From Mytilus edulis (Eukaryota), in contig NC_092353.1 of NCBI RefSeq assembly GCF_963676685.1, positions 620,001 to 684,000 on the forward strand: a stretch of 64,000 bases of DNA, written 5' to 3'. Made by a program: the position numbers and the translations under genes. Below, one piece after another: positions 1 to 48,597 of the stretch (position 1 is its first letter; each line of letters starts with the position of its first letter). The notes beneath the pieces are model-generated. The model was given only the letters and a program-made list of their open reading frames with translations. It did no database searches and was not told the origin of the DNA.

Positions 1-400
1 CTGGAAAACAAAACAAATAAATGGGGAATGTGTCCATGTGACACAAATGATGCCCCTGCTTGCTTATCATATAAAGTTATGAAGGGACATAAATCAAGTA
101 AAGGGACATAACTCTAGAACAGTACAAGTGACAGTCACACCACCAAAATTAAAACTAGAATCAGGTTTTTTTGTGGTTATAAGCATTGAATATAAGTTTC
201 ATAATAACAGGGTTAATTACAGAAATTAGCAAACAGACTATTAAAGTATTAATTTGCAATTTAATTTTCTACGTCATATAGCAGTAATAAAACACTGTTA
301 TTCTGATTCAAAAGTTAAATCAGATAATTGAAATCAGATTTCAATACCAATTCACCCCTCCCCAACCCCTCTATATATAACTTTGATTGTTCAAACTTAC

Positions 401-3400: not shown

Positions 3401-6400
3401 ATTGTCAAGTAGGCATTTCTGTGGCCATAGTTATGTCATGTAATTAGCAAGTTTCTACTGAACATGTCTTTAGATATATTTACCATAACATGGTAGAAAA
3501 AACGGTAAATCTAAAATGCTTTGTCAGCTATTTACAACACATGAGCTGCATCAGATACAAAAGAACCTTATGCAAGTGTACGTATACATGTAGATGTATA
3601 AGATTGTGATTAGTTTTGGAACATTATACAATATGAAAGATGAACTTTGGTCTGTTTAATAGGGTTCCTATATGAATTCAATTTACCTACAGTTACAGAC
3701 TTTACATACAGATTTGTACAACCCTAAATAAGTGACCAGATGCAATGAAAAGGGAGGGTATTTATTTGTATAAGGTTGAAATCTATCCGATGAAAGCTCA
3801 AAGTTTATCATAAGGTTGATATCTATCCGATGAAAGCTCAAAGTTTATCATAAGGTTGATATCTATCCGATGAAAGCTCAAAGTTTAGCTAAGGCTATAT
3901 AAAGAATTCAACGGTACTTGATATTTATTTTACCATAAGAAACTTGCAAATTTTAAAAACTTGTTGAGAAGCCATTACTGTAGCCATAGCTACTAGAGGT
4001 AACTGGCAAATTCTAATTTACTGTCAAGTAGGTATTTCTGTAGCCATGGTTACCAAAAGTAACAGGCAAATTCTAATTTACTGTCAATTAGACATTTCTG
4101 TAGCTATAGTTACCAAAAGTAACTGTCAAATTCATATTTACTGTCAAGTAGACATTTCTGTAGCTATAGTTACCAAAAGTAACTGGCAAATTCACATTTA
4201 TTGTCAAGTAGACATTTCTGTAGCCATAGTAACCAACAGTAACTGGCAAATTCTAATTTATGACAAGTAGGCATTTCTGAAGTCACAGTTATGACATGTT
4301 ATGAGCAAGTTCCTACTGAACATTTCTTTAGTCATATAGTAGAATAAATGGTAAATCTAAATGCTTGGTAAACTATTTACAACACATATTAGCTAAGGCT
4401 ATAGTTGCTAAAGAATTCCCCAGTAATTGATATGGTCATTTTGTGTGAAGAAAATTTTTTTCAAGTAAAAATCAAGGGCATAAAATGAACATGAAAAGGT
4501 GGTTCTCTGATTTTGAATATTATTCTCTGAAAATTTCTTAAAAAAAACCACCAAGAGCTATCAAAACAATGCTAGGACACCTCTCCCCCCTTGAAATAAG
4601 CCTTGGATATCTGAATGATATTGTATTAAACAAATTCTTTCAGTGAAAATGTCAACAAAGCTGTTGTGTAGCAAGTCACAGCCCATTCCAGCAGGTACTG
4701 TCTATAAGCTTCTCAAGAGAATACTGAGGAAATACAGGCAAATTCTACAGTTTTTATGCTGAAGCCGTCATAAATTTTAATTGTTCGATTTTCATGCCTC
4801 ATCTCAACAGATGTTTTTTTTAAATTGTGTTTTCTCTTTAGCTCCATGGGAGATGACAAAAGTAAACAAATATATAATTAACAAAAATAAACTGATAACC
4901 AATTTCTTACCCATGTTCCTGTCTATCACAAATAGAAATTGCATGAAAATCTAATATTTAATTTATCATGGCCTAATAGATACACACATGTATTAGAGTG
5001 ATACAATTAGATGCTATGGCAACACAAACTCACCTGCTGTTTTAAAAAAAAAATAGGAACAAAATTATTTCACACATGCCAAGAAATACTGACAGTACAA
5101 AATCTTGCAATAACTTCTAAATGCATATCAAAAATAGAACAAATACAAGGATTTAAATACGATAAAAACATGTAACAAAATTCATCCACATTCAATAAAA
5201 ATGATTTCTCATCTTTCTAAAAATAAAGTCACACATTCACACATGAACATAAAAAATACATGCTTCCTAAATCAAGCAATGTAATTCTTATAGAAAAAAT
5301 GTTTACAATTGTATTAAACAAAATCTTATCAGACATGTCAGATGGTCAACATGTATCAAGGTAAGTGACTCACCTTATAAATGGTTTAAATATATTTAGT
5401 AATAACTTGATAAAGTTTGTAGGATGGACTAGATATAAGGCTTTTAGATTCTTCTTGTACCTATAAAAGAAAGAATAAGGCCATACAAAAACAATCCTAG
5501 ATTCTTCTTGTATCTATAAAAGAAAGAATAAGGCCATACAAACACAATCCTAGATTCTTCTTGTACCTATAAAAGAAAGAATAAGGCCATACAAAAACAA
5601 TCCTAGATTCTTCTTGTACCTATAAAAGAAAGAATAAGGCCATACAAACACAATCCTATACTCTAACCCTAGCCAGTTTTTTTTCCCAGCAAAAACATCA
5701 GATGTACTGGACATATAGAACTTTTTAGATGTTGTTTTTCATGTTTTAATATTTTGAAACCTTTTTGGCAATTTTGAACAGTTGGGGTATCTACATATTA
5801 CACATAAACATTTGACAGATTTTCTTTGTTCACAAATACACAAAAATACATTTCCCCCCAAGATGCAGAACTCAATGATGAATCAGAGTGTTATAACCAA
5901 AGTACACTGAAGGATATATTGCATTTATCTAATTTTGTGAACTAAAAATGATGGAACACATTATGTTAATACTTTGAATTGGTATTCATACAAATAGGTT
6001 AATACAATATGCACAAATCATGTTATTTGTTTTATTAATTGAGAAATCCCTTTAAACACATACCTATCATTTTGTGACTTGAATATCTGAGTTTGCATTG
6101 TCAATAAATTTCATGACAATTTCTCTGTACATTAGTGACATCTACAATGAGACCAGATCTACACTGAATAGGGGCTTTACATTTGTGTACTTACTTTCTA
6201 TCAATTTCTCTGTACATTACTGACATCTACAAAGAGACCAGATCTACACTGAATAGGGACTTAACATTTGTGTACTCACTTTCTATCAAGTTCTCTGTAC
6301 ATTTGTAACATCCAGCCTAATTTAGGTTTGTTTTTACTTGTCAGTCCGTAGTGGAAGTAAACTATAACATAATCATTCTCCACATACTGATCCAAGGTGT

Positions 6401-9400
6401 ATTTAAGGTATCTGTAATATAGAAATCATGATCCTTTAACTAAATCCATTCTTTTTTCTTTATCTTTGTACATTTCTAAACATGTATTTTTAATACTTTC
6501 CAGGTTATAACATTGCTGTAGGAAGTCTACTTATAAAGTACAGCTACTTATATAAATGTATAGGAAGGAGAGATTTTTTGACAGCAGATGAAACACTTTG
6601 ATTTCTAGTGATCGTAGAAAATGAGGTTAACATTATAACTATTTCCTAAACCACTGCAACATTTTTGAAATGTCAGACTGAATATTGAGGACATCTGATT
6701 ATGACTGTTTACACCAGATAATAATGACTTTACTTAAAGAGGACATGAAGTAATGACTGTTTCTTTTAATTATGTAACATTTAACTGTGCATGTGCTTAG
6801 TCAGGAAATCTGGGTACAACAGTTTCCTATAACTTTGCAATATATTATTTTATACTGCAGCAAGTTGTGTTTATTTCCTAAATATAGTAACATAGCTATA
6901 TTTTGTATAATGTCAATTTCATCACGGAACACTTTCTCCACAAATAGGGGTTCATTTAGGGATGAAAATAAGTTTGACATTTGTGTTACGACCTAAAAGT
7001 TATCAATGTGTTAATTTTAGTTGCAGTATAAAAACAATATAAGGTCAATGTCATTAAAATATAAACTTGTTTGTACTCGGTGCAAAACTGGAGAAGGGCT
7101 TGGTAGAACCTCATCCATCCCCAGTTTCTCAGCCTCATACAAAAAAGTTTATATTTTTTCTGACATTGACCTAATATTGTATATGTATCTGTGAACTTAG
7201 AGGAAGTATACAAACTGAAGCTACAGTAACTGTTATAATGTTTTACTTACTCCATAAGTCGTTCATGATTTATCTGTGAACTTGGAGGAAGTCTACAGGC
7301 TGAAGCGACTATAACTTTCCGGCCATAAGTATCATCCCCTGCCAAAATCAAAATCAAATTAGGTAATGAATCATTGAAAAGTACAACAAAATATCTAGTA
7401 AGTCACCTGCCCATCCCCCATATTACAGATAAGTTACCACATGTTGACTCCCTTATTACTCTACTGAGCCACATCTTTGACCAGTTAGTAACTAGTTAGT
7501 AACCCTCCCCTCCCTCCCTCCTCCTTAACAGATAAGTTACCAGCAACTTTCAGTATACTGTACTGGCCACATCTCTGACTAGTAATTCTCCTTTCTCTTT
7601 CCCCTCCTCCCCAAAGAAATAACATATAAATTACCAGCAACTTCCAGTATCCTATACTGTGCCACATCTCTGAATTCTGATTCATCATTGTCCTCAGCAT
7701 CCTACAATTATATACATAAATGAACCAGATGCTCCGCAGGGCACAGCTTTATACGAACGCAGAGTTCGAACCCTGAACATTGGGGCAAGTATGATACAGC
7801 TCTGAATTTTGATTGTGATTAAATAGTTGACACAACACAGGTTTCTGACACATAATGACTGTGGTCTAATAACTCAAACTTAAAAACTTTAAAAAATTGG
7901 ACATTACCTATTATGGTCAAATATCCAAAATCTAAAAACATGGTTAGATTCAGCATATCAAAGAACCCCAAGAATTCAATTTTTGTTAAAATCAATCTTA
8001 GTTTAATTTTGGACCCTTTGGACCGGGTGTACACCAAAAATTTCTAGAATTAAACTTTTTTTCTTAACCTGATTTTTGGGTTTATATGACTGTAAACAAA
8101 TAATTGGTGAAGAAAAAATTACATGGTGGTGCACTTCTTTTTCTGCTACAGCCCTTTGAAAATACCCAATTTTGATGATTTTCCCGTTTTTCATCAATTT
8201 TTACCTATTTTTGGGCTATAATCCGAAAAAAAGTTACAGTTCCACAATTAAACTTTTTTTCATAATTTCAATAAAGATGAAGTGGACCAATCTGAGTAAA
8301 TTTAACTTAAAAAAAACAAAAAGTAGGTGTTAATATAAGAAAGTTTTATCATATTTTGATGCTTTTTTGTGTCAAATTTACCTTGCTGTCAATTTTGTAA
8401 ATTTGTGATTTTTCTCAGTTTTAAGAACAAAATGCATATTATTTCAAATTTTGTTGTCATAAATGATTGAAAAAATACATATCTAAGAAATTTGAAGAGA
8501 CAAAAATAATATGGGATGTACATGATTCTTGTAAAATCACTTTTTGTACCCCTCACCCATTTTCTTAAAATTTAGGCTAAAAAGACTGACTTGGTTTGTC
8601 GTAAAATTTGAAAACTGGATTACTCAAAAACCATTCATTGTAAATACACAATTTTTTCACAGAGTTATGTTTGTTTATAATATTTTTTAAATTCATTGAT
8701 ATTACCCACTTGTATTACATGTTTTTGAAATAATTCAAGAACAAGATTTTAACGAGACTGATCGAGACTGAAAAGTCATAAGAATACATCCTTAATGTAG
8801 ACCAATTTGAAACTGGGAGCAAAAATTAAGAATCTACATACATAGTTAGATTCGGCATATCAAAGAACCCCAATTATTCAATTTTTGATGAATTCAAACA
8901 AAGTTTAATTTTGGACCCTTTGGGCCCCTTATTCCTAAACTGTTGGGACCAAAACTCCCAAAATCAATCCCAACCTTCCTTTTATGGTCAAAAACCTTGT
9001 GTTTAAATTTCATAGATTTCTATTTTCTTATACTTAAGTTATGGTGCGAAAACAAAGAAAAATGCTTATTTGGGCCCCTTTTGGCCCCTAATTCCTAAAC
9101 TGTTGGGACCAAAACTCCCAAAATCAATCAAAACCTTCCTTTTGTGTTCATAAACCTTGTATTTAATTTTCATTGATTTCTATTTACTTATACTAAAGTT
9201 ATTGTGCGAAAACCAAGAATAATGCTTATTTGGGCCCTTTTTTGGCACCTCATTCCTAAACTGTTGGGACCAAGACTCCCAAAATCAACCCCAACCTTCC
9301 TTCAGCGGTCATAAACCTTGTGTGAAAATTTCATAGATTTCTATTTACTTAAATTAAAGTTATAGTGCGAAAACCAAGAAATGCTTATTTTGGGCCCTTT

Positions 9401-12400: not shown

Positions 12401-15400
12401 TTCATGCTCTCCTGGTTTATAAAGAAGATCCAAATACTACTTTCACATCCATCAATACATATCTAACATTGTGGTTATTTTGTTTTCTTCAGAATGATGT
12501 TTTTTTCTTCTCTTCAAGTTATACAATTTTTTTTTCTGTCTGACATAGATTGTTAGATTTACAATTTATTCTTTGTTTAATAAAACATGTATAACATTGA
12601 TACAATATAACTTTAATATGCAATTACTTAAACATGTGCATTACATTTTATGCATTGCAATCGCCCAAAAGAGCAGCTAACCCTAACCAATGTATTGTTG
12701 AATGCACCAAAAGTATAAATGAATCACAAATGCAATGTCCACAACATTTGATCTTACCTTCCTCCCATGATGTCATTGGTACATTATAATCTTCTGTTAT
12801 TCCTTAAATAATGAGCATCAGTCACTTAACAAAACATACCGGTTCATTATAATCTTTTGTTATTCCTTAAATAATTAGCATCAATCACTTAACATCATAC
12901 CAGTACATTATAATCTTCTGTTATTGAATATTCCTTAAATAATTACCATCGATCACTTAACAAAACATATTGGTACATTATAACCTTCTGTTATTCCTTA
13001 AATAATTACCATCGATCACTTAACAAAACATATTGGTACATTATAATCTTCTGTTATTCCTTAAATAATTACCATCGATCATTAAACAAAACATAATGGC
13101 ACATTATAATCTTCTGTTATTCCTAAAGTAATAACCGACAATCACTTAATATACCGGTACATTATAGTCTTCTGTTATTCTTAAAGTAATAACCATCAAT
13201 CACTTAACAAAACATACTGGTATATTATAATCTTCTGTTATTCCTAAAGTAATAACCATCAATCACTTAACATACCAGTACATTATAGTCTTCTGTTATT
13301 CCTAAAGTAATAACCATCAATCACTTAACATACCGGTACATTATAATCTTCTGTTATTCCTAAAGTAATAACCATCAATCACTTAACAAAACATACCGGT
13401 ACATTATAATCTTCTGTTATTCCTAAAGTAATAACCATCAATCACTTAACATACCGGTACATTATAGTCTTCTGTTATTCCTAAAGTAATAACCGACAAT
13501 CACTTAACATACCAGTACATTATAGTCTTCTGTTATTCCTAAAGTAATAACCATCAATCACTTAACAAAACATACTGGTATATTATAATCTTCTGTTATT
13601 CCTAAAGTAATAACCATCAATCACTTAACATACCGGTACATTATAGTCTTCTGTTATTCTTAAAGTAATAACCATCAATCACTTAACAAAACATACTGGT
13701 ATATTATAATCTTCTGTTATTCCTAAAGTAATAACCATCAATCACTTAACATACCGGTACATTATAGTCTTCTGTTATTCCTAAAGTAATAACCATCAAT
13801 CACTTAACATACCGGTACATTATAATCTTCTGTTATTCCTAAAGTAATAACCATCAATCACTTAACATACCGGTACATTATAATCTTCTGTTATTCCTTA
13901 AGTAATAACCATCAATCACTTAACATACCGGTACATTATAATCTTCTGTTATTCCTAAAGTAATAACCATCAATCACTTAACATACCGGTACATTATAGT
14001 CTTCTGTTATTCCTAAAGTAATAACCATCAATCACTTAACATACCGGTACATTATAATCTTCTGTTATTCCTAAAGTAATAACCATCAATCACTTAACAA
14101 AACATACCGGTACATTATAATCTTCTGTTATTCCTAAAGTAATAACCATCAATCACTTAACATACCGGTACATTATAGTCTTCTGTTATTCCTAAAGTAA
14201 TAACCATCAATCACTTAACATACCGGTACATTATAATCTTCTGTTATTCCTAAAGTAATAACCATCAATCACTTAACATACCGGTACATTATAATCTTCT
14301 GTTATTCCTTAAGTAATAACCATCAATCACTTAACATACCGGTACATTATAATCTTCTGTTATTCCTAAAGTAATAACCATCAATCACTTAACATACCGG
14401 TACATTATAGTCTTCTGTTATTCTTAAAGTAATAACCATCAATCACTTAACAAAACATACTGGTATATTATAATCTTCTGTTATTCCTAAAGTAATAACC
14501 ATCAATCACTTAACAAAACATACTGGTATATTATAATCTTCTGTTATTCCTAAAGTAATAACCATCAATCACTTAACATACCGGTACATTATAGTCTTCT
14601 GTTATTCTTAAAGTAATAACCATCAATCACTTAACAAAACATACTGGTATATTATAATCTTCTGTTATTCCTAAAGTAATAACCATCAATCACTTAACAT
14701 ACCGGTACATTATAGTCTTCTGTTATTCCTAAAGTAATAACCATCAATCACTTAACATACCGGTACATTATAATCTTCTGTTATTCCTAAAGTAATAACC
14801 ATCAATCACTTAACATACCGGTACATTATAATCTTCTGTTATTCCTTAAGTAATAACCATCAATCACTTAACATACCGGTACATTATAATCTTCTGTTAT
14901 TCCTAAAGTAATAACCATCAATCACTTAACATACCGGTACATTATAGTCTTCTGTTATTCCTAAAGTAATAACCATCAATCACTTAACAAAACATAATGG
15001 TACATTATAATCTGCTGTTATTCCTAAATTAATTACCATCAATCACTTAACATACCAGTACATTATAGTCTTCTGTTATTCCTAAAGTAATAACCATCAA
15101 TCACTTAACATACCGGTACATTATAATCTTCTGTTATTCCTAAAGTAATAACCATCAATCACTTAACATACCGGTACATTATAGTCTTCTGTTATTCCTA
15201 AAGTAATAACCATCAATCACTTAACAAAACATAATGGTACATTATAATCTGCTGTTATTCCTAAATTAATTACCATCAACATGATCAATCACTTAACATA
15301 CCATGCAACCAAAGCATAGAACAGCCTCATTGCAGCAACCAGATGCTCCGCAGGGCGCAGCTTTATATGACTGCAGATGTTGAACCCTGAACAGTTGGGG

Positions 15401-23136: not shown

Positions 23137-23139
23137 GAT

Positions 23140-23336
23140 TTTCCCTTGGATAACACACTCTCTTTCAATTGACCGACATTTTCCTATCGGCAGACTTAAA
23201 TTTACAAAACCATTTATCTATGTTTTCTTTAAGGATGTACGTTTATCGTTTATGACAGTCTTATGTTCTTTAATACAGGGGAATAAAAGTATGAATGTCA
23301 AATTTTGGTGATGACAGAAAACAACATCCGGTAAGC
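23140..23336. promoter_or_regulatory. Putative compact bidirectional promoter / 5' UTRs of ARHGAP1-like (-) and TTK (+)
   Basis: ARHGAP1 ATG at 23136 (-). A + strand donor CCG|gtaagc at 23330/23331 could join the TTK acceptor ttttacag at 24915, which lies 10 nt upstream of the TTK ATG and needs an upstream non-coding exon. Confidence 0.5.
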
Positions 23337-36900: not shown

Positions 36901-39900
36901 TATATATTTTTGTATAGGGCAACAAAACAAATCAAATGAAATAAAGTGGGTGTCCCTTTGGGTCAGCCCCACCCCTCATGTCTGAGAACTTGTAAACGGT
37001 CGAGATCCCCACCCCTAAACCATATATATTTTTGTATAGGGCAACAAAACAAATTCAATGAAATAAAGTGGGAGTCCCTTTGGGTCAGCCCCACCCCCTC
37101 ATGTCTGAGAACATGTAAACGGTTGAGATCCCCACCCCTAAACCATATATATTTTTGTATAGGGCAACAAAACAAATCAAATGAAATAAAGTGGGAGTCC
37201 CTTTGGGTCAGCCCCACCCCTTCATGTCTGAGAACTTGTAAACGGTCGAGATCCCCACCCCTAAACCATATCTATTTTTGTATAGGGCAACAAAACAAAT
37301 TCAATGAAATAAAGTGGGAGTCCCTTTGGGTCAGCCCCACCCCCTGTTGTTTGACAACTTGGAAATGGTCAAGATCCCCTCCCCTTAACCATATATATTC
37401 TTGTACTGGACAATAAAACAAATCAAATTCAAAAGAAGGCGAGTCCCTAGGGGTCACTCCCATCCCCTTGTTGTTTGAGAACTTGTAAACGGCTGAGATC
37501 CACACCCACAAACCATATATATTTTTGTATGAGAAAATAAAATAAATCAAAATGAAATATAGAAGAAGTCCACAGGGGTGACCCAACCAACTTTTTTTGG
37601 AAAACTTATACAGTCGAGATGATCACCACCAAACCATATATATTCTATTTTATGGGGCAACAAAACAAAACCAATGAAATATAGTGGGAGTACCTCTGAG
37701 TCATCCCCAACCCCTCATGTTTGAGAACTTGTAAACGGTTGAGATCCCCAACCCTTAATCATAAATATTCTTGTATTGGACAATAAAACGAATAAAGTGA
37801 AATATAATTAAGTCCCTCTTTGTAACCCCACCCCATCCTGTTTTGAGAACTTGTAAACAGTCAAGATCCACCCCCTTTTCGAAAACTTGAAAACTGTTGA
37901 AATCCCCACACTGAAACAACATATAGTCTTGTACGGAATAATAAAACAAATCAGATGAAATAAAAGGCTAGTCCCCTAGGGCCACTCTTACCCTACCTCC
38001 TGCCTGTTTGAGAACTTGTAAACTGTCTAGATCCCCACCCCCAAATCATGAATATCACTTTACTAGACGGGACCAATTTGTATTGGACTTTGCTTAATGT
38101 CAGGCGACCCGTGGGAATGACTAATTTTGAGAGCTTTGTTTGGGAGACTTCGTAGCAGCATCCTGTTACAATTATTTCTTGATAAAGTTTTTTCTTTTTT
38201 AAGTAGGAAAAAAAGGTAACCATGCAATCTACACACTATCTATTTCAAATATTACAATCTACAGTTGCAAACTTTCCACAGGTGCTATCCAGCACTTTGA
38301 TTTGTCATACCTTTTGCTGTAGTCAACAAGCGTTTTAAATCAAGGCATTTTTGCATTGAAGCGTCTATATGATTCGGAATCAAGGAAAACAAACATCACA
38401 CGATTTGTGTTGTGTGCAAGGGTGATATTTGAAAATAAAAAATCTGAAGAACCTTTCAACCCACTGAGTGCACCTTGATTGGCTTTGTCTTTTACCTCTG
38501 TTCCTGTTTAAGGATGTTCGCTGCTCAGTTTCAAAATAAATAACTTTTCATAAAACTAATATGTATTGATAGGTAATAAATTGAGGAATCCAAAAAGCAA
38601 AAAAAATATAGGGGTCAATGTGCTTGTTTTAGAGACATTAGTCATTGAAATTTTGGCGGGAAAATGTTCTCTCTTGATTTTTCATAGCTTTATCATTGAA
38701 CAGTTAAAGTTCTCAAATACTATTAAAAAATAAATGAAATTTTATAAGACTTTTACAAATGACTTATAATTATACACGTAAAAGATTTATAAAAAGAAAA
38801 ATGGGGGTTCATGGGCAAAATTGTTTAAGGCATTCAAATGGTTAAAACCAGAGGATTCCGAAAATCTGACAAAAATTCCAAAACATGACAAGCAGACATC
38901 CTTAAGGGATAAAATCTTTGAGTAAATATGGTCTGAATCGTGCTTTGAAATCAATCTACTTTGTCTTCACTTCGAACAGGTTGGGCACAAGTCAGAAAAT
39001 GTTGGATACCTGATTGAATTCCCTGCTTTCAGGGAACCTCCCTGATTTCTGGTGTAAACAAGACCCGTTTAAATGTGTTTTTATTATTCAATTTATGGCA
39101 TGAAATTTACAAAAGGGCTCGTTTTACGTTATTACTGCATCAGTTGAATTTGTAAATACTCATAAGTATTCTAGGAACAACAAAACATGAATAAGTGAAG
39201 CCTTGTTTTTTCTAGAACTCGAAAAAACATACAAATCTTTTGTTTAGGAATTAATTGACCAAGCTGCATGATCCAGGTGTAACTGAACATCACTGAATTA
39301 TATTCACTTCTATTGAAAATTTTTATTCATTGAATTTTAATTCCCAAGTCATTAACATATCTTTTTGTCATCTCATAATTGATGATCAATGTATGGATTG
39401 GTGAACACAGGAATTGTTTTGTTGTGAGTTATGCATCAAATTAGACTTGAAATAAGCTTGATTTTTAACTAATTAAACACTTGCTTTCATTAAACATTGT
39501 TATCACATGAAGAATGTGTGCTTTTGTAGATTTTATACCTTAGAATAAATAGGAAAAAAAATGAGTCCCTGTATACAGTTTTTAACACCAGAAACCTGGG
39601 ATGTACACTGAAATCAGGGAATACCCCACTTTTCTTGACTTATCTTACCTATTGAATTTTGTAAAAATTCAATATAGAAAAATTATATCAAGAAATAAAA
39701 TAAAATAATTTACCTACCTACCTATCCATACCCTGATAACCTCTGTGAATCATTTATTTTCTTAAATTAAGGAAAACTTACATGTTCGTGAATATCTAAT
39801 TTCGTGGTTCTGCCAAAGTCTACATACATGCCTAAATAGATTTTTTTTACCGAGGGTATAGTTTGCCGGCCTAGATGGTCAAGAGACCCGCGGTAGCCCG

Positions 39901-42900
39901 CACAGTTCTTACGTGCGAATCATTTCATGGTTCACCTGTACCCATGTAATCCATGAAAATTAATATCCAACAAGTAAGAATGAATCCACAATACTAAGTT
40001 AAATCATTTTTGTGGAGCCTTTGACTTAAGTCGAAAAAGCGAGACTAAGCGATCCTATATTCCGTCGTTGTCATGGTTGGCGGCGATGGCGTCCATAAAT
40101 TTTCACTCTGTGGTTAAATTTTTTAAAATTTTAATTTCTTTCTTAAACTGTCCTGGATTTCTACCAAACTTGGACAGAAGCTTGTTTATGATCATAAGAT
40201 AGTATACAGAAGTAAATTTTGTAAAAATAGAATTCCATTTTTTCCATATTTTACTTTTAAATGGACTTAGTTTTTCTGCCAGGAAATATTACATTCACTC
40301 TGTGGTTAAAGTTTTTAAAATTTTAATAACTTTCTTAAACTATCCTGGGTTGGTACCAAATTGGACAGAAGCTTTTTTATGATCATAAGATAGTATCCAG
40401 AAGTAAATTTGTAAAAAAATAAATCCATTTTTCCGTATTTTACTTTTAAATGGGACTTAGATTTTCTGCCAGGAAACAACACATTCACTCTGTGGTTAAA
40501 CTTTTAAAATTTTTAATAACTTTCGTATACTCTTTTGGATTTGTACCAAACTTAAACAGAAGCTTGTTTATAATCAAAAGCTAGTATCTATAAGGAAATT
40601 TAGTTTTCTTCCAGTTAACATTACATTTAGTCTGCAGTTAAAAGTTTTTAAACATTTATTAGTTTCATAAACTATCCTGGATTTTTACCCAACTTGAACA
40701 GAAGCTTCTTACAATTAAAAGATAATATTAACAGGAATATTTTATTGATTTATTTCCTCATTTTTGTTGAGCCTGCGATTAACAGAAAGAGTAGGCGAGA
40801 CACTGGGTTCCGCGAAACCCATACAATTTTTTTTATATGAGCACATATTTTATGGACTTATATAAGCAAATTACCAGTTTATACATGTATTTTTTAGGTC
40901 TGATAGATTGTCCAACGTACCAATTTGTGCCACTCCAAGTGCCGTGCAGCAGACATCAATACCATGTACACCAAGTGTAAGTATTTATTTTCTGGATTAT
41001 AATTAGTGTACCACTTGATAAGTTTGATGATTTTGTACTGTTCAAGAGTAAGAACCTTAGCTACTGTAATAGTTACATTTTCTGTGGTATCCAGATATAA
41101 ATGATAAAATGACTTGACCAAATCTTTTTTGATAAAGTGACCATAAATTACAGGTCAAGTTCAACTGTTGATTGTAAATATTTACATAAATATTTACTAT
41201 AAAATTGTCCAAAAATCATCCCCTAAATAGAAATGGTTACATGGTGATTATTTTATAAGGTTCAAACAATATCATAAAAGAAAGAATGTTTACTTAATAG
41301 AATGTGTATAAAGATGTGAAGCTGCTGATATACAATAATTCAACCAAAAGTCCATCAAATAACACATTAGAGTATGTCAAATCAAGACTGACTTAACAGC
41401 ATGATCTATTATTTAATTTTCAGGTTATGCAGGATGTAGAAACTATCACAGTAAACAATGTAGTCTACATGATACTGGATTTACTTGGGAAAGGTGGCTC
41501 TAGTAAGGTAATTATAGTCAAAATAGTTAGAGAAAGGTTGTTGTAGTAAGGCAATCACATGTTTTTTGACATGCTGTGAAAAGTCAGCCTAAGTAAGGTT
41601 CAAAGAATGTACCTGTCCATATGACCTTTACCTAATTGTCCCTTTTTAAAGTTTTCATCATATGGTCATTTATTTAGTTGCTATAAGGAATACTTAAAAG
41701 TATTTTTGATTTTTTTGTATGATTTTTGGTGTACACTTAAGAGAACTGCAAACAGTAGTGTACAAAGTGTCACTTGACCTTACAATAAAACAGATTGACT
41801 TTTTATAAATTGTTCATCATACTTTTGCAGGTCTACCATGTACATGATTCCAAGCCTCCATCTAAAGCACTCAAAGTAGTCAACTTAAATGATGCCAATG
41901 AAGAAATAGTCAATGGTTACAAAAACGAAGTCAAGTTACTGCTACAGTTACAGTATTGTCCAAAAGTAATCAAACTATATGATTAGTAAGTAAAATGTCT
42001 AGACTTACAATACATGCGTCTTCCCTATAATCAAATACAATTTCTCAAGCAAGTCAAACAATACACATGTGGCCTCTCTGAAAACAAATCCATGTAAATA
42101 GCAAATCAATTAATACACATGTGTCATACTCTAAAGCAAGTCAGTTATTACACATGTGTCATCTGTGTAATTAAACCTATGCTTAGAGCAAATCAAACAT
42201 ACACATGTGTCCTCTCTGTTATACTCTAAGGCAAGTCAAATTACACATGTGTCCTCTGTAAATAAATCAGTCTTCATCAAGTCAAACAGTACACATGTGT
42301 CATCTCTGTATCAAATTCAATGTCTCAAGCAAGTCAAATAATACACATGTTTCATCTTTTATAATTTGGAGTCTTCCCCTGAAGTATTTTTAACCACAAT
42401 GATGTCATAACTGACCTGGCTGAACAAGTTTACATTGATAAAACAGCTGTAGAAAATGTATTCACATTTTTCTTGTCTGACTTGAACTAATCTTTTGTTC
42501 CTGTTGGTTTCAAAGCATGATAAGAGTTATTTTCAGCTTTGTGCTTATATTAAGTTCTTTTATTCTAAGTTATGTGTATTTCTTTCCTCATTATTCAGTA
42601 TTTATTTTTTCAGTGAGTACAGACCAGAAGAAAACAAATTATATATAGTAATGGAGTATGGGAACTGTGACTTTGCTCAGTTTCTGAAAGATAAAATAAA
42701 AGAAGATTGTAAACTTTCAGACCATTTGATCAAGTATTACTGGGAGTCTATGTTAATGGCAGTCCATGCTTTACATAAAGAAGGTAGGGGTCAAGGGTCA
42801 TGGTCAGACCATTTGATCAAGTATTACTGGGAGTCTATGTTAATGGCAGTCCATGCTTTACATAAAGAAGGTAGGGGTCAAGGGTCATGGTCAGACCATT

Positions 42901-45900
42901 TGATCAAGTTTTACTGGGAGTCTATGTTAATGGCTGTCCACGCTTTACATAAAGAAGGTAGGGGTCAAGGGTCATGGTCAGATAGTTTGATCAAGTATTA
43001 CTGGGAGTCTATGTTAATGGCTGTCCATGCTTTACATAAAGAAGGTAGGGGTCAAGGTCAGACCAGTTGATCAAGTATTACTGGTAGTCTATGTTAATGG
43101 CAGTCCACACTTTACATAAAGAAGGTAGGGGTCAAGGGTCATAGTCAAATCATTTGAAAAGTATTACTGGTAGTCTATGTTAATGGCAGTCCACACCTTT
43201 CATAAAGAAGGTAGGGGTCAAGGGTTATAGTCAGATGATTTGATCAAGTATTACTGGGAGTCTATGTACATGATGTAGATGGCTGTCCACGCTTTACATA
43301 AAGAAGGTAAGGGTCACTGTCAGATCACTGAAAGTCAAGTTCTTTTCAATAACCTAGATAAACATGCATGTGTTAAAGATATGGACCATATCTATTTTCA
43401 AGATAAGGGTATATTGTGCTCAGTCTGAATGTACATACAATATTTATCTTCATAATTTACAGGAATCATTCATTCAGACTTAAAGCCATCAAATTTCATC
43501 ATAATAGGAGGTGCCTTAAAACTGATAGACTTTGGTATAGCTAAATCTGTGCAACCAGATAAAACCAGTGTTCTGACTGAAATGCAGGTTGGCACATTAA
43601 ACTACATGAGTCCAGAGTCTATAGCAGATTATGGTTTAGATGAAAAACCAATGTATAAGGTATGATCATGTTGTAATTATCTCCCTTGTATTAGATATGA
43701 TCATAATTATAATTATCTCCCTTGTATAAGATATTATAATGCTGTTATTATCTCCCTTGAATAAGATATGATCATTATTATAATTACCTCCCATGAATAA
43801 GATATTATCATAATTATAACTATCTCCCTTGTATAAGATATTATGTTGTTATTGTCACTTGTTTCAGTTTTGGAATAGGACCCCAGTTACATGATATCAG
43901 TCCAGCCTACAAATGAAGTCCCTTAATAAATCAACTATCTTTCAAATGGGTTATTCTCTTAAATGCCAGTCATGACGCACCATGAACCATAAAGGGGGCT
44001 ACTAGTATGAGAAAATAAATAAAATTTTGTAGTCTTATATTGGGAATAAAAAATCTGCCTGTTAACTTGGATAAAATTGCATTGAAGTAATGGGGGATTA
44101 ATTGGGTCTTCATTCTATATAATCGCATGGTAATTATCTCCCTTGTATAAAAGAGGGGCGCAAGATACCAGAGGGACAGTCAAACTCATAGATTGAAAAA
44201 TAAAGCCATGGCTAAAAAAAAACAGACAAATAATAGTACACAAGACACAACATAGAAAACTAAACACTTAGTAACACAAGCCCACCAAAAACTGGAGGTG
44301 ATTTCAGGTGCTCCAGATAAGATATGATGTTTCCAAATACATAAATAAGATTTCCCTTACAGACAGTATGATGTTTTGAAGATGGACAATACATACAATT
44401 CTTTGTTACAGATAGGTGTGAAGAGTGACGTCTGGTCCCTTGGATGTATTTTATACAATATGGTGTATGGTTTTACTCCATTCCAAAGAATCAACAAACA
44501 ATTTGCCAAACTTCAGGCTATCACCAACTCCAGTTATGTTATTCATTTCCCAGAAATAGAGGACAAACGTCTGCTGGATGTCATGAAGGTTAGTAGGTTA
44601 TCTCCCCTGAAATAGAGGACAAACGTCTGCTGGATGTCATGAAGGCTAGTAGATTATCTCCCCTGAAATAGAGGACAAACGTCTGCTGGATGTCATGAAG
44701 GTTAGTAGATTATCTCCCCTGAAATAGAGGACAAACGTCTGCTGGATGTCATGAAGGCTAGTAGATTATCTCCCCTGAAATAGAGGACAAACGTCTGCTG
44801 GATGTCATGAAGGCTAGTAGGTTATCTCCCCTGAAATAGAGGACAAACGTCTGCTGGATGTCATGAAGGCTAGTAGGTTCCAAATAGAGGACAAACGTCT
44901 GCTGGATGTCATGAAGCTAAGTAAGTTCTCTTCCCTGAAATAGAGGACAAACGTCTGCTGGATGTCATGAAGGTTAGTAGGTTCCAAATAGAGGACAAAC
45001 GTCTGCTGGATGTCATGAAGCTAAGTAAGTTCTCTTCCCTGAAATAGAGGACAAATGTCTGCTGGATGTCATGAAGGTTAGTAGGTTCTCTCCCCTGAAA
45101 TAGAGGACAAACGTCTGCTGGATGTCATGAAGGTTAGTAGGTTCTCTCCCCAGAAATAGAGGACAAACGTCTGCTGGTTGTCATGAAGGTTAGTAGGTTC
45201 TCTCCCCTGAAATAGAGGACAAACGTCTGCTGGATGTCATGAAGGTTAGTAGATTATCTCCCTTGAAATAGAGGACAAACGTCTGCTGGATGTCATGAAG
45301 GTTAGTAGGTTCTCTCCCCAGAAATAGAGGACAAACGTCTGCTGGATGTCATGAAGGTTAGTAGATTATCTCCCCTGAAATAGAGGACAAACGTCTGCTG
45401 GATGTCATGAAGGTTAGTAGGTTCTCTCCCCTGAAATAGAGGACAAACGTCTGCTGGATGTCATGAAGGTTAGTAGGTTCTCTCCCCAGAAATAGAGGAC
45501 AAACGTCTGCTGGTTGTCATGAAGGTTAGTAGGTTATCTCCCCTGAAATAGAGGACAAACGTCTGCTGGATGTCATGAAGATTAGTAGGTTATCTCCCCT
45601 GAAATAGAGGACAAATGTCTGCTGGATGTCATGAAGATTAGTAGGTTATCTCCCCTGAAATAGAGGACAAACGTCTGCTGGTTGTCATGAAGATTAGTAG
45701 GTTCTCTCCCCTGAAATAGAGGACAAACGTCTGCTGGTTGTCATGAAGGTTACTAGGTTCTCTCCCCTGAAATAGAGGACAAACGTCTGCTGGATGTCAT
45801 GAAGGTTAGTAGGTTCTCTCCCCTGAAATAGAGGACAAACGTCTGCTGGTTGTCATGAAGGTTACTAGGTTCTCTCCCCTGAAATAGAGGACAAACGTCT

Positions 45901-48597
45901 GCTGGTTGTCATGAAGGTTACTAGGTTCTCTCCCCTGAAATAGAGGACAAATGTCTGCTGGATGTCATGAAGATTAGTAGGTTATCTCCCCTGAAATAGA
46001 GGACAAGCGTCTGCTGGATGTCATGAAGATTAGTAGGTTATCTCCCCTGAAATAGAGGACAAACGTCTGCTGGATGTCATGAAGGTTAGTAGATTATCTC
46101 CCCTGAAATAGAGGACAAACGTCTGCTGGTTGTCATGAAGGTTAGTAGTAGGTTCTTTTCCCAGGAATAGAGAACAAACGTCTGCTGGATGTCATGAAGG
46201 TAAGTAGCAGGTTATCTCCCCAAAAATAGAGGACAAGCGTCTGCTGGATGTCATGAAGGTAAGTAGCAGGTTATCTCCCCAGAAATAGAGGACAAACGTC
46301 TGCTTGATGTCATGAAGGTAAGTAGCAGGTTATCTCCCCAGAAATAGAGAACAAACGTCTGCTGGATGTCATGAAGGTTAATAGTAGGTTCTCTTCCCAA
46401 AAATAGAGGACACACGTCTGCTGGATGTCACAAGGTGGTATTAGGTTCTCTCCCCTAAACAAGGTATAAATGAATGAATAGAAATTATATGGAAAATTCA
46501 ATAAAAGAGATCTCATACCTATGCATCAGAAAGCATATGTATAAAGAAGTTTAAAACAACAACAAAAATAAATTAGGAGATAACTGTATTGTATTTTAAG
46601 TTTGGCCATCATAAAACGTAGATTTTACTGTCGCAAACTGAGTTTACCTAACGATACGTAGTGGAGCTAAGTACACATATCAAAATAAATTCCATTTGGT
46701 AAATACTTAAGCCAAAAATGCAAAAGTCTGAGAAACTGTTACATATTCTTTTAATAGTATACAACAATGTGAGGTCATATGTATGGCAAACATAAACACT
46801 AAAATTATTATTGTTTGCAGCTTATTATTTGGTTTAGAAATTACATACCCAAAAAAACAGAATTCAAAATGGTGGCTTTCTTTGTTACTGACTGGTAGAA
46901 CATATAATCTTATCCTTCTAAATATTTGTCAACGTTCAATGAAAATTATTGTTACAAACAAATTGCATTAAAATTTATCATTGTATCTGTACTTTCATGA
47001 TTATTTTGCAGTCCCATTTACTGATTTCACCAGTCAGAGTATTTGTTTAAAAATGACAAAGTTGATATAATTTTCTATTTTCAGTAAGATGTTTGCATAG
47101 TTTATTAGTTGCACTCCCCTACACTTAAAAATATTTAACATACAATTGTACAATATATGAAAACAAAACAAATATTATCCATCAGATTTCAATTATATAC
47201 AAGATATGTTATTCTTACTATTTTTAGAAATGTTTGATCAGAGATCCTAAAGTTCGACCAAGCATTGAAGATTTACTTCACCATCCATATCTGAAGAGGG
47301 AGAAAAAAGAAGGTATAAACTGATTAGAGCTATTGCTGATAAGTTTATCCACATTTCTGAAGAGAGCATTGTAATGTGTTTTGACTTCAATATTTAAAGA
47401 CTCTATTGTTACAAATATGTTGACAAAGTACCACTTGGGTAAAATGTTATAGAAAATGAAAATGAATGAAAAAAAAATCACAACATGACTATTTGATTAA
47501 TGAAATTAACTGTGTTTTACAGAACTAAGAAAAAATGAATCAAAATAGAATGGACTATATTATCCAATTGGTTTTTATTTTTTTCCCCTACAAAGTAAGT
47601 GTTGTATTCAAATTTTCAGCTTGCATTTTGTTTTACTTTCAGAACCATCAGTAGTAGACAAAAGAATAGAGAGACTTGTAGAAAGATTAGCAGATAAAGT
47701 ATCTTCCCCTAATACTCTACGCAGTCTACTAAGGAGTGAAATATTAAAGGTATTAATTATTGGCAATTTGTACTTTTTTCCTTTGATCTTACTGCTTGTT
47801 ATTAATTTGTATCATGTAAAGACCTGATACTTGAAAATATTAGGCATTTTTATGCCCCACTTAGGAGCATTATTTTTTCATTCTGTGCAGCCATTTGTCT
47901 GTTTGTCTTGCTTCAGGATAAAGTTTTCGGTCAAGGAAGTTTTTGAAGAAGTTGAAGTCCATTCAAATTGAAACATAGTACACATGTTCCCTGTGGTATG
48001 ATCTTTCTAAATTTAATGCCAAATTAGAGGTTTTACCCCAATTTAACAGTCAGTTTAACATAGAAAATAATTATGTACATTTTGATATGGTGTAGCTACA
48101 TTATTGATTATTGTGGATTCATTATTATTCTTTTAATACCAATTTTCATGGAATTTGTGGGTATAGGTATATATTGTTATTAAATGTTCAACAAATTACA
48201 AATTTCCAATAGGCTTTTATGTAGACTTTGGCAAACCACAAAATTAAATATCCATGAACATGTAAGTTTTCCCTAATCCATGACAATTGGTATTTACAAA
48301 TTCGAATGAATCCACAGTATCACTGTTAATTCAGAAATTTTTGTGATGTTTTTATTATCGCAACAATTTAAACTCGCATTTTGACATTTATTATATGAAT
48401 TAAACAGGATTTTTCTCAATATTGCAAAAATTAAAATCCCATTTCAGTAAAAAAAATGTCAAAATCACAATAATTTCTGATTTACAGTAATTTGATGAGA
48501 TAAAGAGTTAAGATAATTGTAAAAAAAACTTATTCTATAATTTCAGGGAATGTCAGCTGAAAGAGAATGTCCAGAAAACAAAGAAAATGTTCATTAA
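24926..48597 (+). CDS. TTK: Dual-specificity protein kinase TTK/Mps1 (spindle assembly checkpoint kinase); 18 coding exons, 930 aa
   Basis: GT-AG exons with consistent phases: 24926-24995, 25347-25498, 26018-26091, 26657-26766, 27297-27434, 27934-28003, 28441-28608, 33361-33500, 34252-35017, 40898-40976, 41424-41507, 41831-41985, 42614-42783, 43463-43659, 44412-44588, 47228-47312, 47643-47749, 48547-48597 (2793 nt including TAA). N-terminal TPR-like region ([37 protein letters not shown]). Kinase motifs [86 protein letters not shown] are typical of Mps1. Confidence 0.95.
28260..28286 (+). CDS. Candidate 27-nt symmetric (phase 2-2) alternative microexon of TTK (TDENGYCI)
   Basis: tattttttgtaag|TACTGATGAAAATGGTTACTGTATCAG|gtaatt; preserves the frame between exons 27934-28003 and 28441-28608. 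Confidence 0.4.
28953..29555. mobile_element. HINE-like interspersed repeat with three ~169-bp internal units (partial copy at ~47848-48070)
   Basis: caggttaaagtttttggtcaaggtagtttttgat repeated at ~29020, 29189 and 29358. Confidence 0.55.
30721..32082 (+). mobile_element. 5'-truncated Penelope-like retroelement (probably Naiad-type, RT C-terminal) with 3' UTR
   Basis: ORF 30727-31443 followed by ~640 nt of 3' UTR. The terminal motif gttgtctctttgacacattccccatttccattctcaatttta recurs at ~18272-18318. Confidence 0.75.
30727..31443 (+). CDS. C-terminal half of a Penelope-like reverse transcriptase (5'-truncated)
   Basis: FRYLDDI catalytic motif, [30 protein letters not shown]. The ORF stops with no downstream GIY-YIG domain. 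Confidence 0.75.
   Translation: MTKISKDPSKQHLINKFNNTFRYLDDILALNNDDFSMYINEIYPVELTLNKANTNNDHCPFLDLDIYITNGKLNTKIYDKREDFSFPIVNYPFLDGDVPLSPSYGVYISQLVRFARVCNNVLDFNERNLCITEKLLHQGFRYHKLVKTFTKFYHRYKDIIRKYSSTCRLLIRSGISHPIFYGNILYKAQRCQYSPQKLTKPLNRLIKKGYNYDTVVKSLKIAYFGVNIESLIRSLHWN
32600..33262 (-). mobile_element. Retroelement 3'-end fragment related to the Penelope-like 3' UTR
   Basis: Reverse complement shares aacatgtttaac.ccgcc..gcctgtcccaagtcag with 31790-31835. The tail motif gttgtctcattggcaatcataccacatct recurs at ~9900, ~22900, ~33805 and ~49810. Confidence 0.55.
36340..38045. repeat. ~120-bp tandem repeat with homogeneous core (36665-37340) and degenerate flanks
   Basis: gagaacttgtaaacggtcgagatccccacccctaaaccatat..aaatcaaatgaaataaagtgggagtccctttgggtcagcccc units. 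Confidence 0.9.
38512..38901. mobile_element. TTAA-flanked MITE (Kolobok-like GG..CC termini)
   Basis: ttaa|ggatgttcgct ... agcagacatcc|ttaa. Confidence 0.65.
40015..40833. mobile_element. HINE-like interspersed repeat with ~185-bp internal units
   Basis: Repeated cattcactctgtggttaaa..cagaagctt units; terminal gggttccgcgaaaccc stem followed by a T-tract. Confidence 0.5.
42717..43325 (+). repeat. 87-bp x7 tandem repeat spanning a TTK kinase-exon donor
   Basis: Unit is the last 67 nt of the exon + gtaggggtcaagggtcatgg. Confidence 0.95.
44548..46458 (+). repeat. 56-bp tandem array (~34 copies) spanning a TTK kinase-exon donor
   Basis: gaaatagaggacaaacgtctgctggatgtcatgaag|gttagtaggttatctcccct. 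Confidence 0.95.

What the first reader, a model, noticed from the sequence alone, without database searches (positions are those of the whole stretch)
5445..46458. Recurrent tandem repeats seeded exactly at exon-intron junctions in both genes (decoy splice-site arrays)
Seen: about 11 junctions carry a tandem duplication whose unit contains the exon edge plus the splice site. ARHGAP1-like: 5445-5656 (acceptor, 53 bp x4), ~6115-6310 (donor, 85 bp), 7186-7320 (donor, 85 bp), ~7425-7675 (donor, ~94 bp), 12776-15302 (acceptor, 58 bp x~43). TTK: 25436-25597 (donor, 79 bp x2), 33480-33785 (donor, ~38 bp), ~41965-42360 (old, degenerate), 42717-43325 (87 bp x7), 43650-43845 (~37 bp), 44548-46458 (56 bp x~34). 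Units are unrelated to each other, ages vary, and arrays extend into the intron so that the exon-proximal site gives the normal protein. Inference: either a junction-targeted duplication mechanism (e.g. splicing-coupled R-loops or break repair), or a splicing system with strict exon-proximal site choice that makes such duplications neutral. I do not know of a named description of this, but cannot search the literature.
Basis: partly seen in the sequence, partly recalled or inferred. Interest (0 to 1): 0.9.

Follow-up and report, generated by a model that had tools for sequence, protein, structure and literature searches.

The report
Minisatellites seeded on exon–intron junctions
In this mussel (Mytilus) genome, short tandem repeats often start on an exon edge plus its splice site and pile extra, mostly intact splice sites into the intron; this happens about ten times more often than random placement predicts, and the cell still splices at the copy next to the exon.

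Summary
Nine of the eleven listed arrays are tandem repeats whose unit carries an exon edge plus its splice site. They sit at 5 TTK donors, 3 ARHGAP1-like donors and 1 ARHGAP1-like acceptor.

- One claim fails: the 52-bp array at 42130-42357 lies 145 nt from the junction and shows no significant similarity to it.
- One stays open: the 58-bp x43 array is real and unique to this locus, but its 45-nt microexon has no RNA or homology support.

The excess is real. Under one uniform criterion (periods up to 100 bp), 7 of 46 window junction ends carry such an array against 0.69 expected. In an independent sample of kinesin and myosin exons elsewhere in the genome, 4 of 77 do against 0.33 expected (p = 4e-4). 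Ordinary intronic arrays are not denser near exons.

Spliced RNA contigs from two studies join the exon-proximal donor at the 87-bp x7 and 36-bp x5 arrays. Consecutive Pfam coordinates support proximal sites elsewhere. Short-read k-mer depth supports multiple copies.

Each array resembles the human F7 intron-7 minisatellite. The genome-wide excess was not found in the searched literature, and its cause is unresolved. First readers noted the same pattern in at least eight other windows of this genome.

The parts
24926..48600 (+). TTK (Mps1) kinase gene, 18 coding exons: 24926-24995, 25347-25498, 26018-26091, 26657-26766, 27297-27434, 27934-28003, 28441-28655, 33361-33500, 34252-35017, 40898-40976, 41424-41507, 41831-41985, 42614-42783, 43463-43659, 44412-44588, 47228-47312, 47643-47749, 48547-~48600
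   Evidence: tblastn of P0002 (TTK-like of Mytilus californianus) on the window. Splice consensus. Spliced RNA contigs for exons 12-15. Pkinase HMM positions 69-117, 119-173 and 175-212 for exons 13-15.
401..7701 (-). ARHGAP1-like gene, the six homology-backed exons inside the window: 7701-7635, 7338-7251, 6411-6280, 5460-5374, 915-817, 511-401. N-terminal exons upstream are not mapped, and the RhoGAP domain runs off the window start.
   Evidence: Sequence and splice sites. CRAL_TRIO_2 positions 29-68 and 71-96 for exons 6411-6280 and 5460-5374.
25436..25597 (+). Donor array at TTK exon 2: 79 bp x2.1. Unit is about 63 nt of exon end plus about 16 nt of intron. The decoy donor GTAAGT is intact.
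   Evidence: The relative's protein reads ...LYEKAFR, which is the first copy.
33479..33767 (+). Donor array at TTK exon 8: 36 bp x about 8. Unit is 13-25 nt of exon end plus GTAAGT and following intron. 5 of 7 decoy GT are intact.
   Evidence: (score 85.5 at period 36).
41470..41575 (+).
   Evidence: score 13.5 at period 43; a 24-nt copy spanning AAG|GTAAT, reached by 1 of 500 shuffles.
42130..42357 (+). 52-bp x4.7 purely intronic array. It is NOT seeded on the exon 12 junction.
   Evidence: 145 nt from the exon; alignment to the junction is not significant.
42717..43316 (+). Donor array at TTK exon 13: 87 bp x6.9, in frame. Unit is 67 nt of exon end plus 20 nt of intron. 6 of 6 decoy GT are intact. 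The first donor (42783|42784) is the one used.
   Evidence: RNA contigs X2 rec 9 and X3 rec 14 join 42781/3 to 43461/3. DNA k-mer depth is 549 against about 76 nearby, a ratio of about 7.
43651..43841 (+). Donor array at TTK exon 14: 36 bp x5.3. Unit is 8 nt of exon end plus 28 nt of intron. All 5 decoys read AT instead of GT. The first donor is used.
   Evidence: RNA contigs join 43657/9 to 44410/2.
44549..46456 (+). Donor array at TTK exon 15: 56 bp x34. Unit is about 40 nt of exon end plus about 16 nt of intron. 21 of 32 decoy GT are intact. The array is unique to this locus.
   Evidence: Next exon is at 47228. RNA contigs cannot tell which copy is joined. Short-read DNA depth within the array reaches 155-5940, baseline about 76-100, with one 197-nt bin uncovered.
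7420..7690 (-). Old donor array at ARHGAP1-like exon 7701-7635: about 94 bp x3. Unit is about 45 nt of exon plus about 49 nt of intron. Decoys are degenerate but keep GT.
   Evidence: (score 27.5 at period 94).
7150..7320 (-). Decayed 85-bp duplication across the donor of exon 7338-7251. A 42-nt, 86% identical copy of exon sequence lies in tandem register in the intron. The decoy donor is lost.
   Evidence: 0 of 500 shuffles reach the score.
6117..6312 (-). Donor array at exon 6411-6280: 85 bp x2.3. Unit is about 25 nt of exon plus 60 nt of intron. The decoy donor GTAAGT is intact.
   Evidence: (score 88.5).
5445..5658 (-). Acceptor array at exon 5460-5374: 53 bp x4. Unit is 37 nt of intron end plus 16 nt of exon start. 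3 of 3 decoy AG are intact. The last, exon-proximal AG gives the conserved protein.
   Evidence: (score 148.5).
12778..15279 (-). 58 bp x about 43 array, unique to this locus. Each unit has an acceptor-like and a donor-like site around 26 nt. It is a candidate acceptor array of a 45-nt microexon (12802-12758), which is unverified.
   Evidence: There is no RNA or homology support for the microexon.

Best explanation
These are locally born minisatellites. A short tandem duplication of 36-94 bp covered an exon edge together with its splice site, and unequal exchange or slippage later changed the copy number (2 to about 34 here).

The spliceosome keeps using the exon-proximal site: the first donor, or the last acceptor. 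All further copies therefore end up inside the intron, and the protein is unchanged.

Such arrays are about ten-fold more frequent than random placement of this genome's small minisatellites predicts. My preferred reason is that tandem duplications arise at least as readily in exon sequence as in introns. Purely exonic ones are purged unless they are in frame in a tolerant region. Those that carry a splice site along are rescued because they are spliced out.

Shown: anatomy, local origin, multi-copy state, excess over random placement, proximal donor use at two large arrays.
Inferred: the birth mechanism (end-joining or fill-in type duplication), tolerance by positional site choice plus decay of mis-spliced RNA, and the exon-bias-plus-filter cause of the excess.
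For: Anatomy. Units contain conserved coding sequence plus GT or AG.

Local origin. The 56-bp and 58-bp units match nowhere else in the 1.37-Gb genome.

Real copies. Independent short-read contigs show about 7x depth over the 87-bp x7 array and up to about 60x within the 56-bp array.

Proximal use. RNA contigs of two studies are colinear over 41829-41985 | 42614-42781 | 43461-43657 | 44410-4458x. Pfam coordinates are consecutive across array-bearing junctions. Mytilus TTK proteins, including two from RNA assemblies, pass from ...DVMK straight to the exon at 47228.

Excess. Window: 7/46 against 0.69 expected. Independent kinesin/myosin sample: 4/77 against 0.33. Combined p = 1e-8. With the most conservative null (all periods up to 260 bp): 12 against 3.85, p = 7e-4. 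Non-spanning 20-100-bp arrays have a flat density of 0.11-0.29 per kb at all distances from exons.

Extra cases at exons outside the test list: L039 60 bp x2, L040 55 bp x9.5, L039 73 bp x2.

Hints for exon bias plus filter. In 8 of 13 donor arrays the intron share of the unit is below 0.3 (p = 0.018). The only arrays wholly inside exons are in frame (36 and 57 bp, TTK exon 9). Periods of junction arrays are multiples of 3 in about one third of cases, as chance predicts.

Hint for birth by end-joining. L039 60 bp x2.00 is 100% identical with blunt borders and no microhomology. That outcome is described for polymerase alpha-primase fill-in at break ends (PMC8355091).

Precedent for tolerance. 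In the human F7 intron-7 VNTR the most upstream of identical donors is chosen (PMC1557585).
Against: The independent sample is small: 77 junction ends, with a 95% interval of 2-14.5% for the 5 of 77 rate. It is not significant if large TE-type satellites are kept in the null (5 against 2.0, p = 0.053).

The window was picked by a reader because it looked striking. It is also subtelomeric (0.62 Mb from a contig end), and its rate is higher than the sample's (p = 0.04).

The cut at periods up to 100 bp was chosen after seeing the data.

Exon-biased birth is not shown directly: no arrays were seen in 13 kb of kinase coding sequence, which is uninformative.

Which donor copy is used at the 56-bp x34 array is unresolved. 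Short RNA contigs inside two arrays could be pre-mRNA or distal-donor products.

There is no RNA evidence for any acceptor array or for the ARHGAP1-like gene.
Confidence: 0.55

Rival explanations
1. A junction-targeted mutational process. DNA breaks or replication problems would concentrate at exon-intron borders, for example through polymerase pausing, co-transcriptional spliceosome assembly, R-loop edges or nucleosome edges. Their repair would leave small tandem duplications centred on the border.
For: The excess is confined to arrays that span a junction; arrays merely near exons are not enriched. The excess is seen in unrelated genes on several chromosomes. One very young duplication has blunt borders typical of break repair (PMC8355091).
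Against: The junction is not central in the units. The intron share ranges from 0.08 to 0.78 and is skewed to mostly exonic units, which a hotspot at the border does not predict. Arrays inside exons cannot be seen because selection removes them, so 'contains a junction' and 'contains exon sequence' cannot be separated here. There is no direct evidence of breaks.
Confidence: 0.22
2. Chance. The genome is so rich in intronic minisatellites that some fall on junctions, and a reader scanning for them finds several per window. There is no real excess.
For: About 9% of control positions lie in some tandem repeat. With all periods up to 260 bp in the null, the independent sample alone gives 5 against 2.0 expected (p = 0.053). 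The window was selected for looking striking.
Against: Most of that null comes from 110-195-bp satellites that recur at the same periods in several loci, which I take to be transposon-borne; only the 56-bp and 58-bp units were tested for copies elsewhere. For periods up to 100 bp the expectation is 0.33 in the sample and 0.69 in the window, against 4 and 7 seen. Combined, even the conservative null gives p = 7e-4. Three of the 'control' arrays turned out to be junction arrays at unlisted exons.
Confidence: 0.1
3. Selected function. Arrays of decoy sites would be kept because they help the gene, for example as extra U1 binding sites that strengthen exon definition or suppress premature polyadenylation in AT-rich introns, or as regulated unproductive splicing.
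For: Donor arrays outnumber acceptor arrays (11/59 against 3/64, p = 0.02). Many decoy donors are perfect, for example 14 of 14 GTAAGT in L032 and 31 of 31 in L035.
Against: Decoys decay freely in older arrays: TTK exon 14 has 0 of 5 GT, exon 15 has 21 of 32, and the ARHGAP1-like 7251 copy has lost its donor. Copy number differs 2 against 9.5 between recent paralogs. Acceptor arrays also occur. Intact decoys in young arrays are expected from their age alone.
Confidence: 0.07
4. Assembly artefact. The arrays would be false expansions made by the assembler.
For: Long tandem repeats are a known weak point of assemblies, and copy numbers could not be checked with long reads.
Against: Independent short-read contigs show raised depth that matches the copy number (about 7x for 7 copies). 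Copies carry distinct variants in higher-order patterns. The same kind of array is seen at many loci, and low-copy arrays with diverged copies assemble unambiguously.
Confidence: 0.02

Closest known systems
Human F7 intron-7 37-bp VNTR (Borensztajn et al. 2006, PMC1557585)
   Same: It is a minisatellite whose first unit spans the exon-intron boundary, so the authentic donor is followed by identical pseudo-donors that stay silent. The most upstream site is chosen (5'-to-3' 'oriented scanning'). Here the first donor is likewise used at the 87-bp x7 and 36-bp x5 arrays.
   Different: F7 is a single locus in a mammal. Here the pattern recurs at roughly 5-20% of the sampled junction ends, in unrelated genes, includes acceptor-side arrays, reaches 34 copies, and is in excess over random placement.
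Internal gene duplications that create or extend introns (Rogers AGGT model; Gao and Lynch 2009, cited from my own knowledge; potato RdRp case, PMC4974935, title and abstract only)
   Same: A tandem duplication that includes splice signals is neutralised because the duplicate is spliced out.
   Different: Those cases duplicate exon sequence to make a new intron. Here the introns already exist, are long, and continue with unique sequence beyond the array. The duplication only adds decoy sites and length, and then expands into a minisatellite.
Small tandem duplications from break repair (polymerase alpha-primase fill-in at break ends, PMC8355091; patch-mediated repair of adjacent nicks in plants, from my own knowledge)
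   Same: The size range is tens of bases and the borders are blunt. The 60-bp x2.00 duplication in L039 has no microhomology.
   Different: Those studies describe the mutational step only. No link to splice junctions is described there, and the link is not shown here either.
Tandem exon duplication / mutually exclusive exon clusters
   Same: Both are tandem copies of exon-derived sequence within a gene.
   Different: In those clusters whole exons with both splice sites are duplicated and used alternatively. Here units hold part of an exon and one splice site, and periods are not biased to multiples of three. The 58-bp unit with both site-like motifs is the only possible exception.

Membership tests
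Boundary-spanning intronic minisatellite (F7 IVS7 type) | Head-to-tail units of about 10-100 bp | tested here: met
   TRF periods are 36-87 bp with 2-34 copies. Two older arrays (85 and 94 bp) were found by alignment.
Boundary-spanning intronic minisatellite (F7 IVS7 type) | The terminal unit spans the exon-intron boundary, so the authentic site is accompanied by homologous pseudo-sites | tested here: met
   Met for 9 arrays in the window and 8 in other loci. Not met for 42130-42357.
Boundary-spanning intronic minisatellite (F7 IVS7 type) | The exon-proximal (most upstream) donor is the one used | tested here: met
   RNA contigs of two studies show it at 42783 and 43659. Pfam coordinates are consecutive across five junctions. 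It is unresolved at 44588 and there is no RNA evidence for acceptor arrays.
Boundary-spanning intronic minisatellite (F7 IVS7 type) | Pseudo-sites are functional when the authentic site is removed | not testable with these tools
   This needs minigene mutagenesis. Sequence alone shows most decoy GT/AG and their consensus intact.
Dispersed satellite or transposon-borne tandem repeat | The same unit occurs at other places in the genome | tested here: not met
   The 56-bp and 58-bp units match only their own arrays in 1.37 Gb. Other units contain the host gene's conserved coding sequence.
Intron gain by tandem duplication of an exonic AGGT segment | The duplication lies within an exon and the new intron is bounded by the duplicated copies | tested here: not met
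   Arrays sit at one edge of long introns that continue with unrelated unique sequence. For example, 46457-47227 lies after the 56-bp array and 43317-43462 after the 87-bp array. The opposite splice site is not part of the repeat.
Tandem exon duplication / mutually exclusive exons | The unit contains a whole exon with both splice sites | tested here: not met
   Units hold 8-87 nt of one exon edge and one splice site. It is inconclusive only for the 58-bp unit, which has an acceptor-like and a donor-like motif.

The most novel reading that the evidence does not exclude
Exon-intron borders in Mytilus would be true mutational hotspots for small tandem duplication, through a process coupled to transcription or splicing or to exon-positioned chromatin. 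That process would have seeded thousands of decoy-splice-site minisatellites genome-wide. Extrapolating from 5 of 77 junction ends gives roughly 2-14% of all junction ends.
Probability: 0.25. Interest if true: 0.8.

Novelty: new variant of a known kind. Interest (0 to 1): 0.62.

Why it matters
If the sampled rate holds genome-wide, this mussel genome carries thousands of natural experiments in which an authentic splice site is followed or preceded by 1 to more than 30 near-identical copies.

- How a spliceosome picks one site among equals (scanning, exon definition or competition) has been studied at single engineered loci such as F7. Here it could be read genome-wide from RNA data, for donors and acceptors alike.
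- The excess points to an unknown bias in where small tandem duplications arise or survive. That bears on how introns grow, how minisatellites are born and how new exons or protein repeats could emerge. The 87-bp, 69-bp, 45-bp and 36-bp arrays are in frame.
- The arrays are also traps for gene prediction and short-read assembly in bivalve genomes.

Tried and rejected
- Assembly artefact: rejected on short-read depth and unit variants.
- Dispersed satellite or transposon origin: rejected for two arrays by a whole-genome search and for the others by their coding content.
- General crowding of minisatellites near exons: rejected, because the density of non-spanning arrays is flat with distance.
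- Systematic inactivation of decoy sites: not seen. Only TTK exons 14 and 15 show loss, and the copies there are not independent.
- In-frame bias of periods: none.
- The '~41965-42360' array as junction-seeded: rejected.
- The C. elegans minisatellite and splicing paper (PMC4039745) concerns a dispersed regulatory repeat, not junction-seeded arrays.
- Three further literature searches found no genome-wide description.
- Intronless kinase loci L001-L030 were uninformative on exon-biased birth.
- Which copy of the 56-bp x34 donor is used: RNA contigs stop inside the first unit and carry only 28 nt that are identical in all copies.
- Microexon at 12802-12758: could not be verified. No RNA call was left, and length limits of the protein search exclude full-length relatives for such short exons.
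Full report
**What the window is.** It is AT-rich (about 31% G+C) and lies at C10:620001-684000 of a 1.37-Gb assembly (matches fall on contigs up to C14). It holds a TTK (Mps1) kinase gene on the + strand and an ARHGAP1-like gene on the - strand. The best protein match to a TTK exon is 'TTK-like' of Mytilus californianus, with M. coruscus in the same cluster. Identity of 93-100% per exon points to another Mytilus species.

I mapped 18 TTK exons with that protein, splice consensus and spliced RNA contigs. I mapped six ARHGAP1-like exons with sequence, splice sites and Pfam.

**Check of the observation.** TRF finds about 25 distinct arrays in the window. Nine of the eleven listed items are junction-seeded:
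- Five TTK donors: 25498 (79 bp x2), 33500 (36 bp x about 8), 42783 (87 bp x7), 43659 (36 bp x5) and 44588 (56 bp x34).
- Three ARHGAP1-like donors: 7635 (about 94 bp x3), 7251 (85 bp x2, decayed) and 6280 (85 bp x2.3).
- One ARHGAP1-like acceptor: 5460 (53 bp x4).

These rest. The item at '~41965-42360' fails. The 52-bp array there begins 145 nt past the donor, and its similarity to the junction is matched by 78 of 500 shuffles.

The 58-bp x43 array (12778-15279) is real and unique to this locus. The 45-nt exon it would be seeded on has no RNA or homology support, and its frame does not join the next known exon directly. A borderline extra case lies at the exon 11 donor.

**Are the arrays real, and which site is used?** I laid two RNA contig sets, one raw RNA run of a relative and one DNA contig set on 41700-47600.
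- Two RNA contigs from different studies (726 and 1457 nt) are colinear over 41829-41985 | 42614-42781 | 43461-43657 | 44410-4458x. So the first donor is used at both the 87-bp x7 and the 36-bp x5 arrays.
- At the 56-bp x34 array the contigs break inside the first unit. The contigs of the next exon carry only 28 nt that are identical in every copy, so the copy used is not resolved.
- Mytilus TTK proteins, two of them from RNA assemblies, pass from ...DVMK directly to the exon at 47228.
- Short RNA contigs inside two arrays have depths compatible with pre-mRNA summed over copies. They do not exclude minor distal use.
- DNA contigs of an independent short-read run show about 7x depth over the 7-copy array and up to about 60x within the 34-copy array.

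Pfam positions run on without a gap across array-bearing junctions. They are Pkinase 69-117 | 119-173 | 175-212, and CRAL_TRIO_2 29-68 | 71-96. This holds only if the proximal sites are used, including the last AG of the 53-bp acceptor array.

**More than chance?** I used one criterion for junctions and for control positions. It is an ungapped tandem match of score 25 or more running through the position, with a copy on one side only.
- In the window, control positions meet it at 1.2-1.7% for periods up to 100 bp and at 3.2-4.2% for periods up to 260 bp.
- Seven of 46 junction ends meet it, against 0.69 expected (p = 8e-6), or 1.84 expected with all periods (p = 0.003).

The window was chosen by a reader, so I built an independent sample. 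It consists of exon-level matches to the kinesin and myosin motor profiles across the genome, picked without regard to repeats.
- Control rates there are 0.53% and 0.35% for periods up to 100 bp, and 2.6% for all periods. The latter is dominated by 110-195-bp satellites that recur in several loci, which I take to be transposon-borne.
- Four junction ends meet the criterion against 0.33 expected (p = 4e-4).
- A fifth (L035, 45 bp x31) is caught only at a longer period because its first unit has an indel. With all periods the count is 5 against 2.0 (p = 0.053).
- Combined: 11 against 1.02 (p = 1e-8), or 12 against 3.85 with the most conservative null (p = 7e-4).

Verified by eye:
- L032: 61 bp x at least 15, made of 56 nt of exon plus GTAAG, with all 14 decoys perfect GTAAGT.
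- L037: 69 bp x2.
- L035: 10 nt of exon plus 35 nt of intron.
- L043: 94 bp x8, made of TTTTTAG plus 87 nt of exon.
- L048: 83 bp x3.8.

Three arrays that I had counted as controls turned out to sit on myosin exons absent from my list. They are L039 60 bp x2, its paralog L040 55 bp x9.5, and L039 73 bp x2 at an acceptor. The excess is therefore, if anything, underestimated.

The density of non-spanning 20-100-bp arrays is flat from 0-50 nt to more than 1 kb from exons, at 0.11-0.29 per kb. The excess belongs to spanning a junction, not to being near an exon.

**Further properties.**
- Donor arrays outnumber acceptor arrays: 11 of 59 against 3 of 64 (p = 0.02).
- Decoy GT/AG are mostly intact, so site choice is positional. 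Loss is seen only in TTK exon 14 (0 of 5, all AT) and exon 15 (21 of 32).
- Periods are multiples of three in about one third of cases, as chance predicts.
- The only arrays wholly inside exons are in frame: 36 and 57 bp in the poorly conserved TTK exon 9, where the relative's protein differs by whole repeat units.
- Donor units tend to be mostly exonic: the intron share is below 0.3 in 8 of 13 (p = 0.018).
- One very young duplication (L039, 60 bp x2.00, 100% identical) has blunt borders without microhomology.

**Explanation.** Each array is a local tandem duplication that happened to include a splice site and then changed in copy number. It is harmless because the exon-proximal site stays in use. 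The same was shown experimentally for the human F7 intron-7 minisatellite, whose first unit spans the boundary and whose identical downstream donors stay silent (PMC1557585).

Tolerance alone cannot give a ten-fold excess. My preferred account (about 0.55) is exon-biased or at least exon-inclusive birth, followed by a selection filter that keeps only duplications carrying a splice site along. A true junction-targeted break-and-repair process remains possible (about 0.2). Pure chance (0.1), selected function (0.07) and assembly artefact (0.02) are less likely for the reasons listed under the rivals.

**Comparison and novelty.** Single arrays are members of a known kind, the F7 type. I found no description of a genome-wide excess, of acceptor-side arrays, or of this feature in bivalves in four literature searches. 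First readers of this scan noted the same pattern in at least eight other windows of this genome. Those notes are unchecked leads, not support.

**Limits.**
- Only one reads call was available, so there is no RNA evidence for ARHGAP1-like or for acceptor arrays.
- The independent sample is small.
- The cut at periods up to 100 bp was chosen after seeing the data.

Noticed in passing
window 34364-34565 and 34684-34955 (+): There are in-frame coding minisatellites (36 bp x5.6 and 57 bp x4.6) inside the long, poorly conserved TTK exon 9. The M. californianus protein differs from the window by whole repeat units.
   Followed up: partly
window 50388-53064 and 53063-54415: Two large arrays abut each other downstream of the TTK stop codon: 110 bp x24 at 95% identity and 35 bp x39. 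Origin and relation to the TTK 3' end were not examined.
   Followed up: no
window 54839-58087 (-): An open frame of 1083 aa looks like a LINE-type retrotransposon with endonuclease and reverse transcriptase. A first-reader note places a ribozyme-like 5' end at 58201-58429.
   Followed up: no
window 44147-44290: This is a piece of a very high-copy dispersed repeat inside the TTK intron. Summed word depth in the bin holding it reaches 3.9 million in the DNA contigs, and it is strongly covered in RNA runs too.
   Followed up: no
window 8908-9475; L031 1908-2528; L035 6500-6885; L047 3662-4256: Satellites of about 160 bp containing GGGCCC recur in several loci. They look like a dispersed, element-borne family and dominate the large-period tandem repeats.
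   Followed up: no
G000 C1:44210256-44230434 and C3:19693088-19698990: Whole kinase-domain open frames (270-284 aa) are repeated head to tail, at least 10 times with a period of about 1868 bp and at least 4 times with about 1765 bp.
   Followed up: no
L039 392-511 and L040 4-523 (C10:50.24 and 50.29 Mb): Two recent myosin heavy-chain paralogs carry the same donor-junction unit with identical borders, but 2 copies in one and at least 9.5 in the other (with a 5-nt deletion). The array predates the gene duplication and changes copy number quickly.
   Followed up: partly
G000 C3:11403690-11404098: Two adjacent kinesin matches cover overlapping profile positions (40-93 and 54-129) only 14 nt apart. 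This may be another partial exon duplication at an acceptor. The DNA could not be fetched.
   Followed up: no
L036 3723-3997: A 36-bp x7.6 intronic array reads ...CATGTAAGTG... on the strand opposite to the kinesin gene, which is donor-like. There is no evidence of an antisense exon.
   Followed up: no
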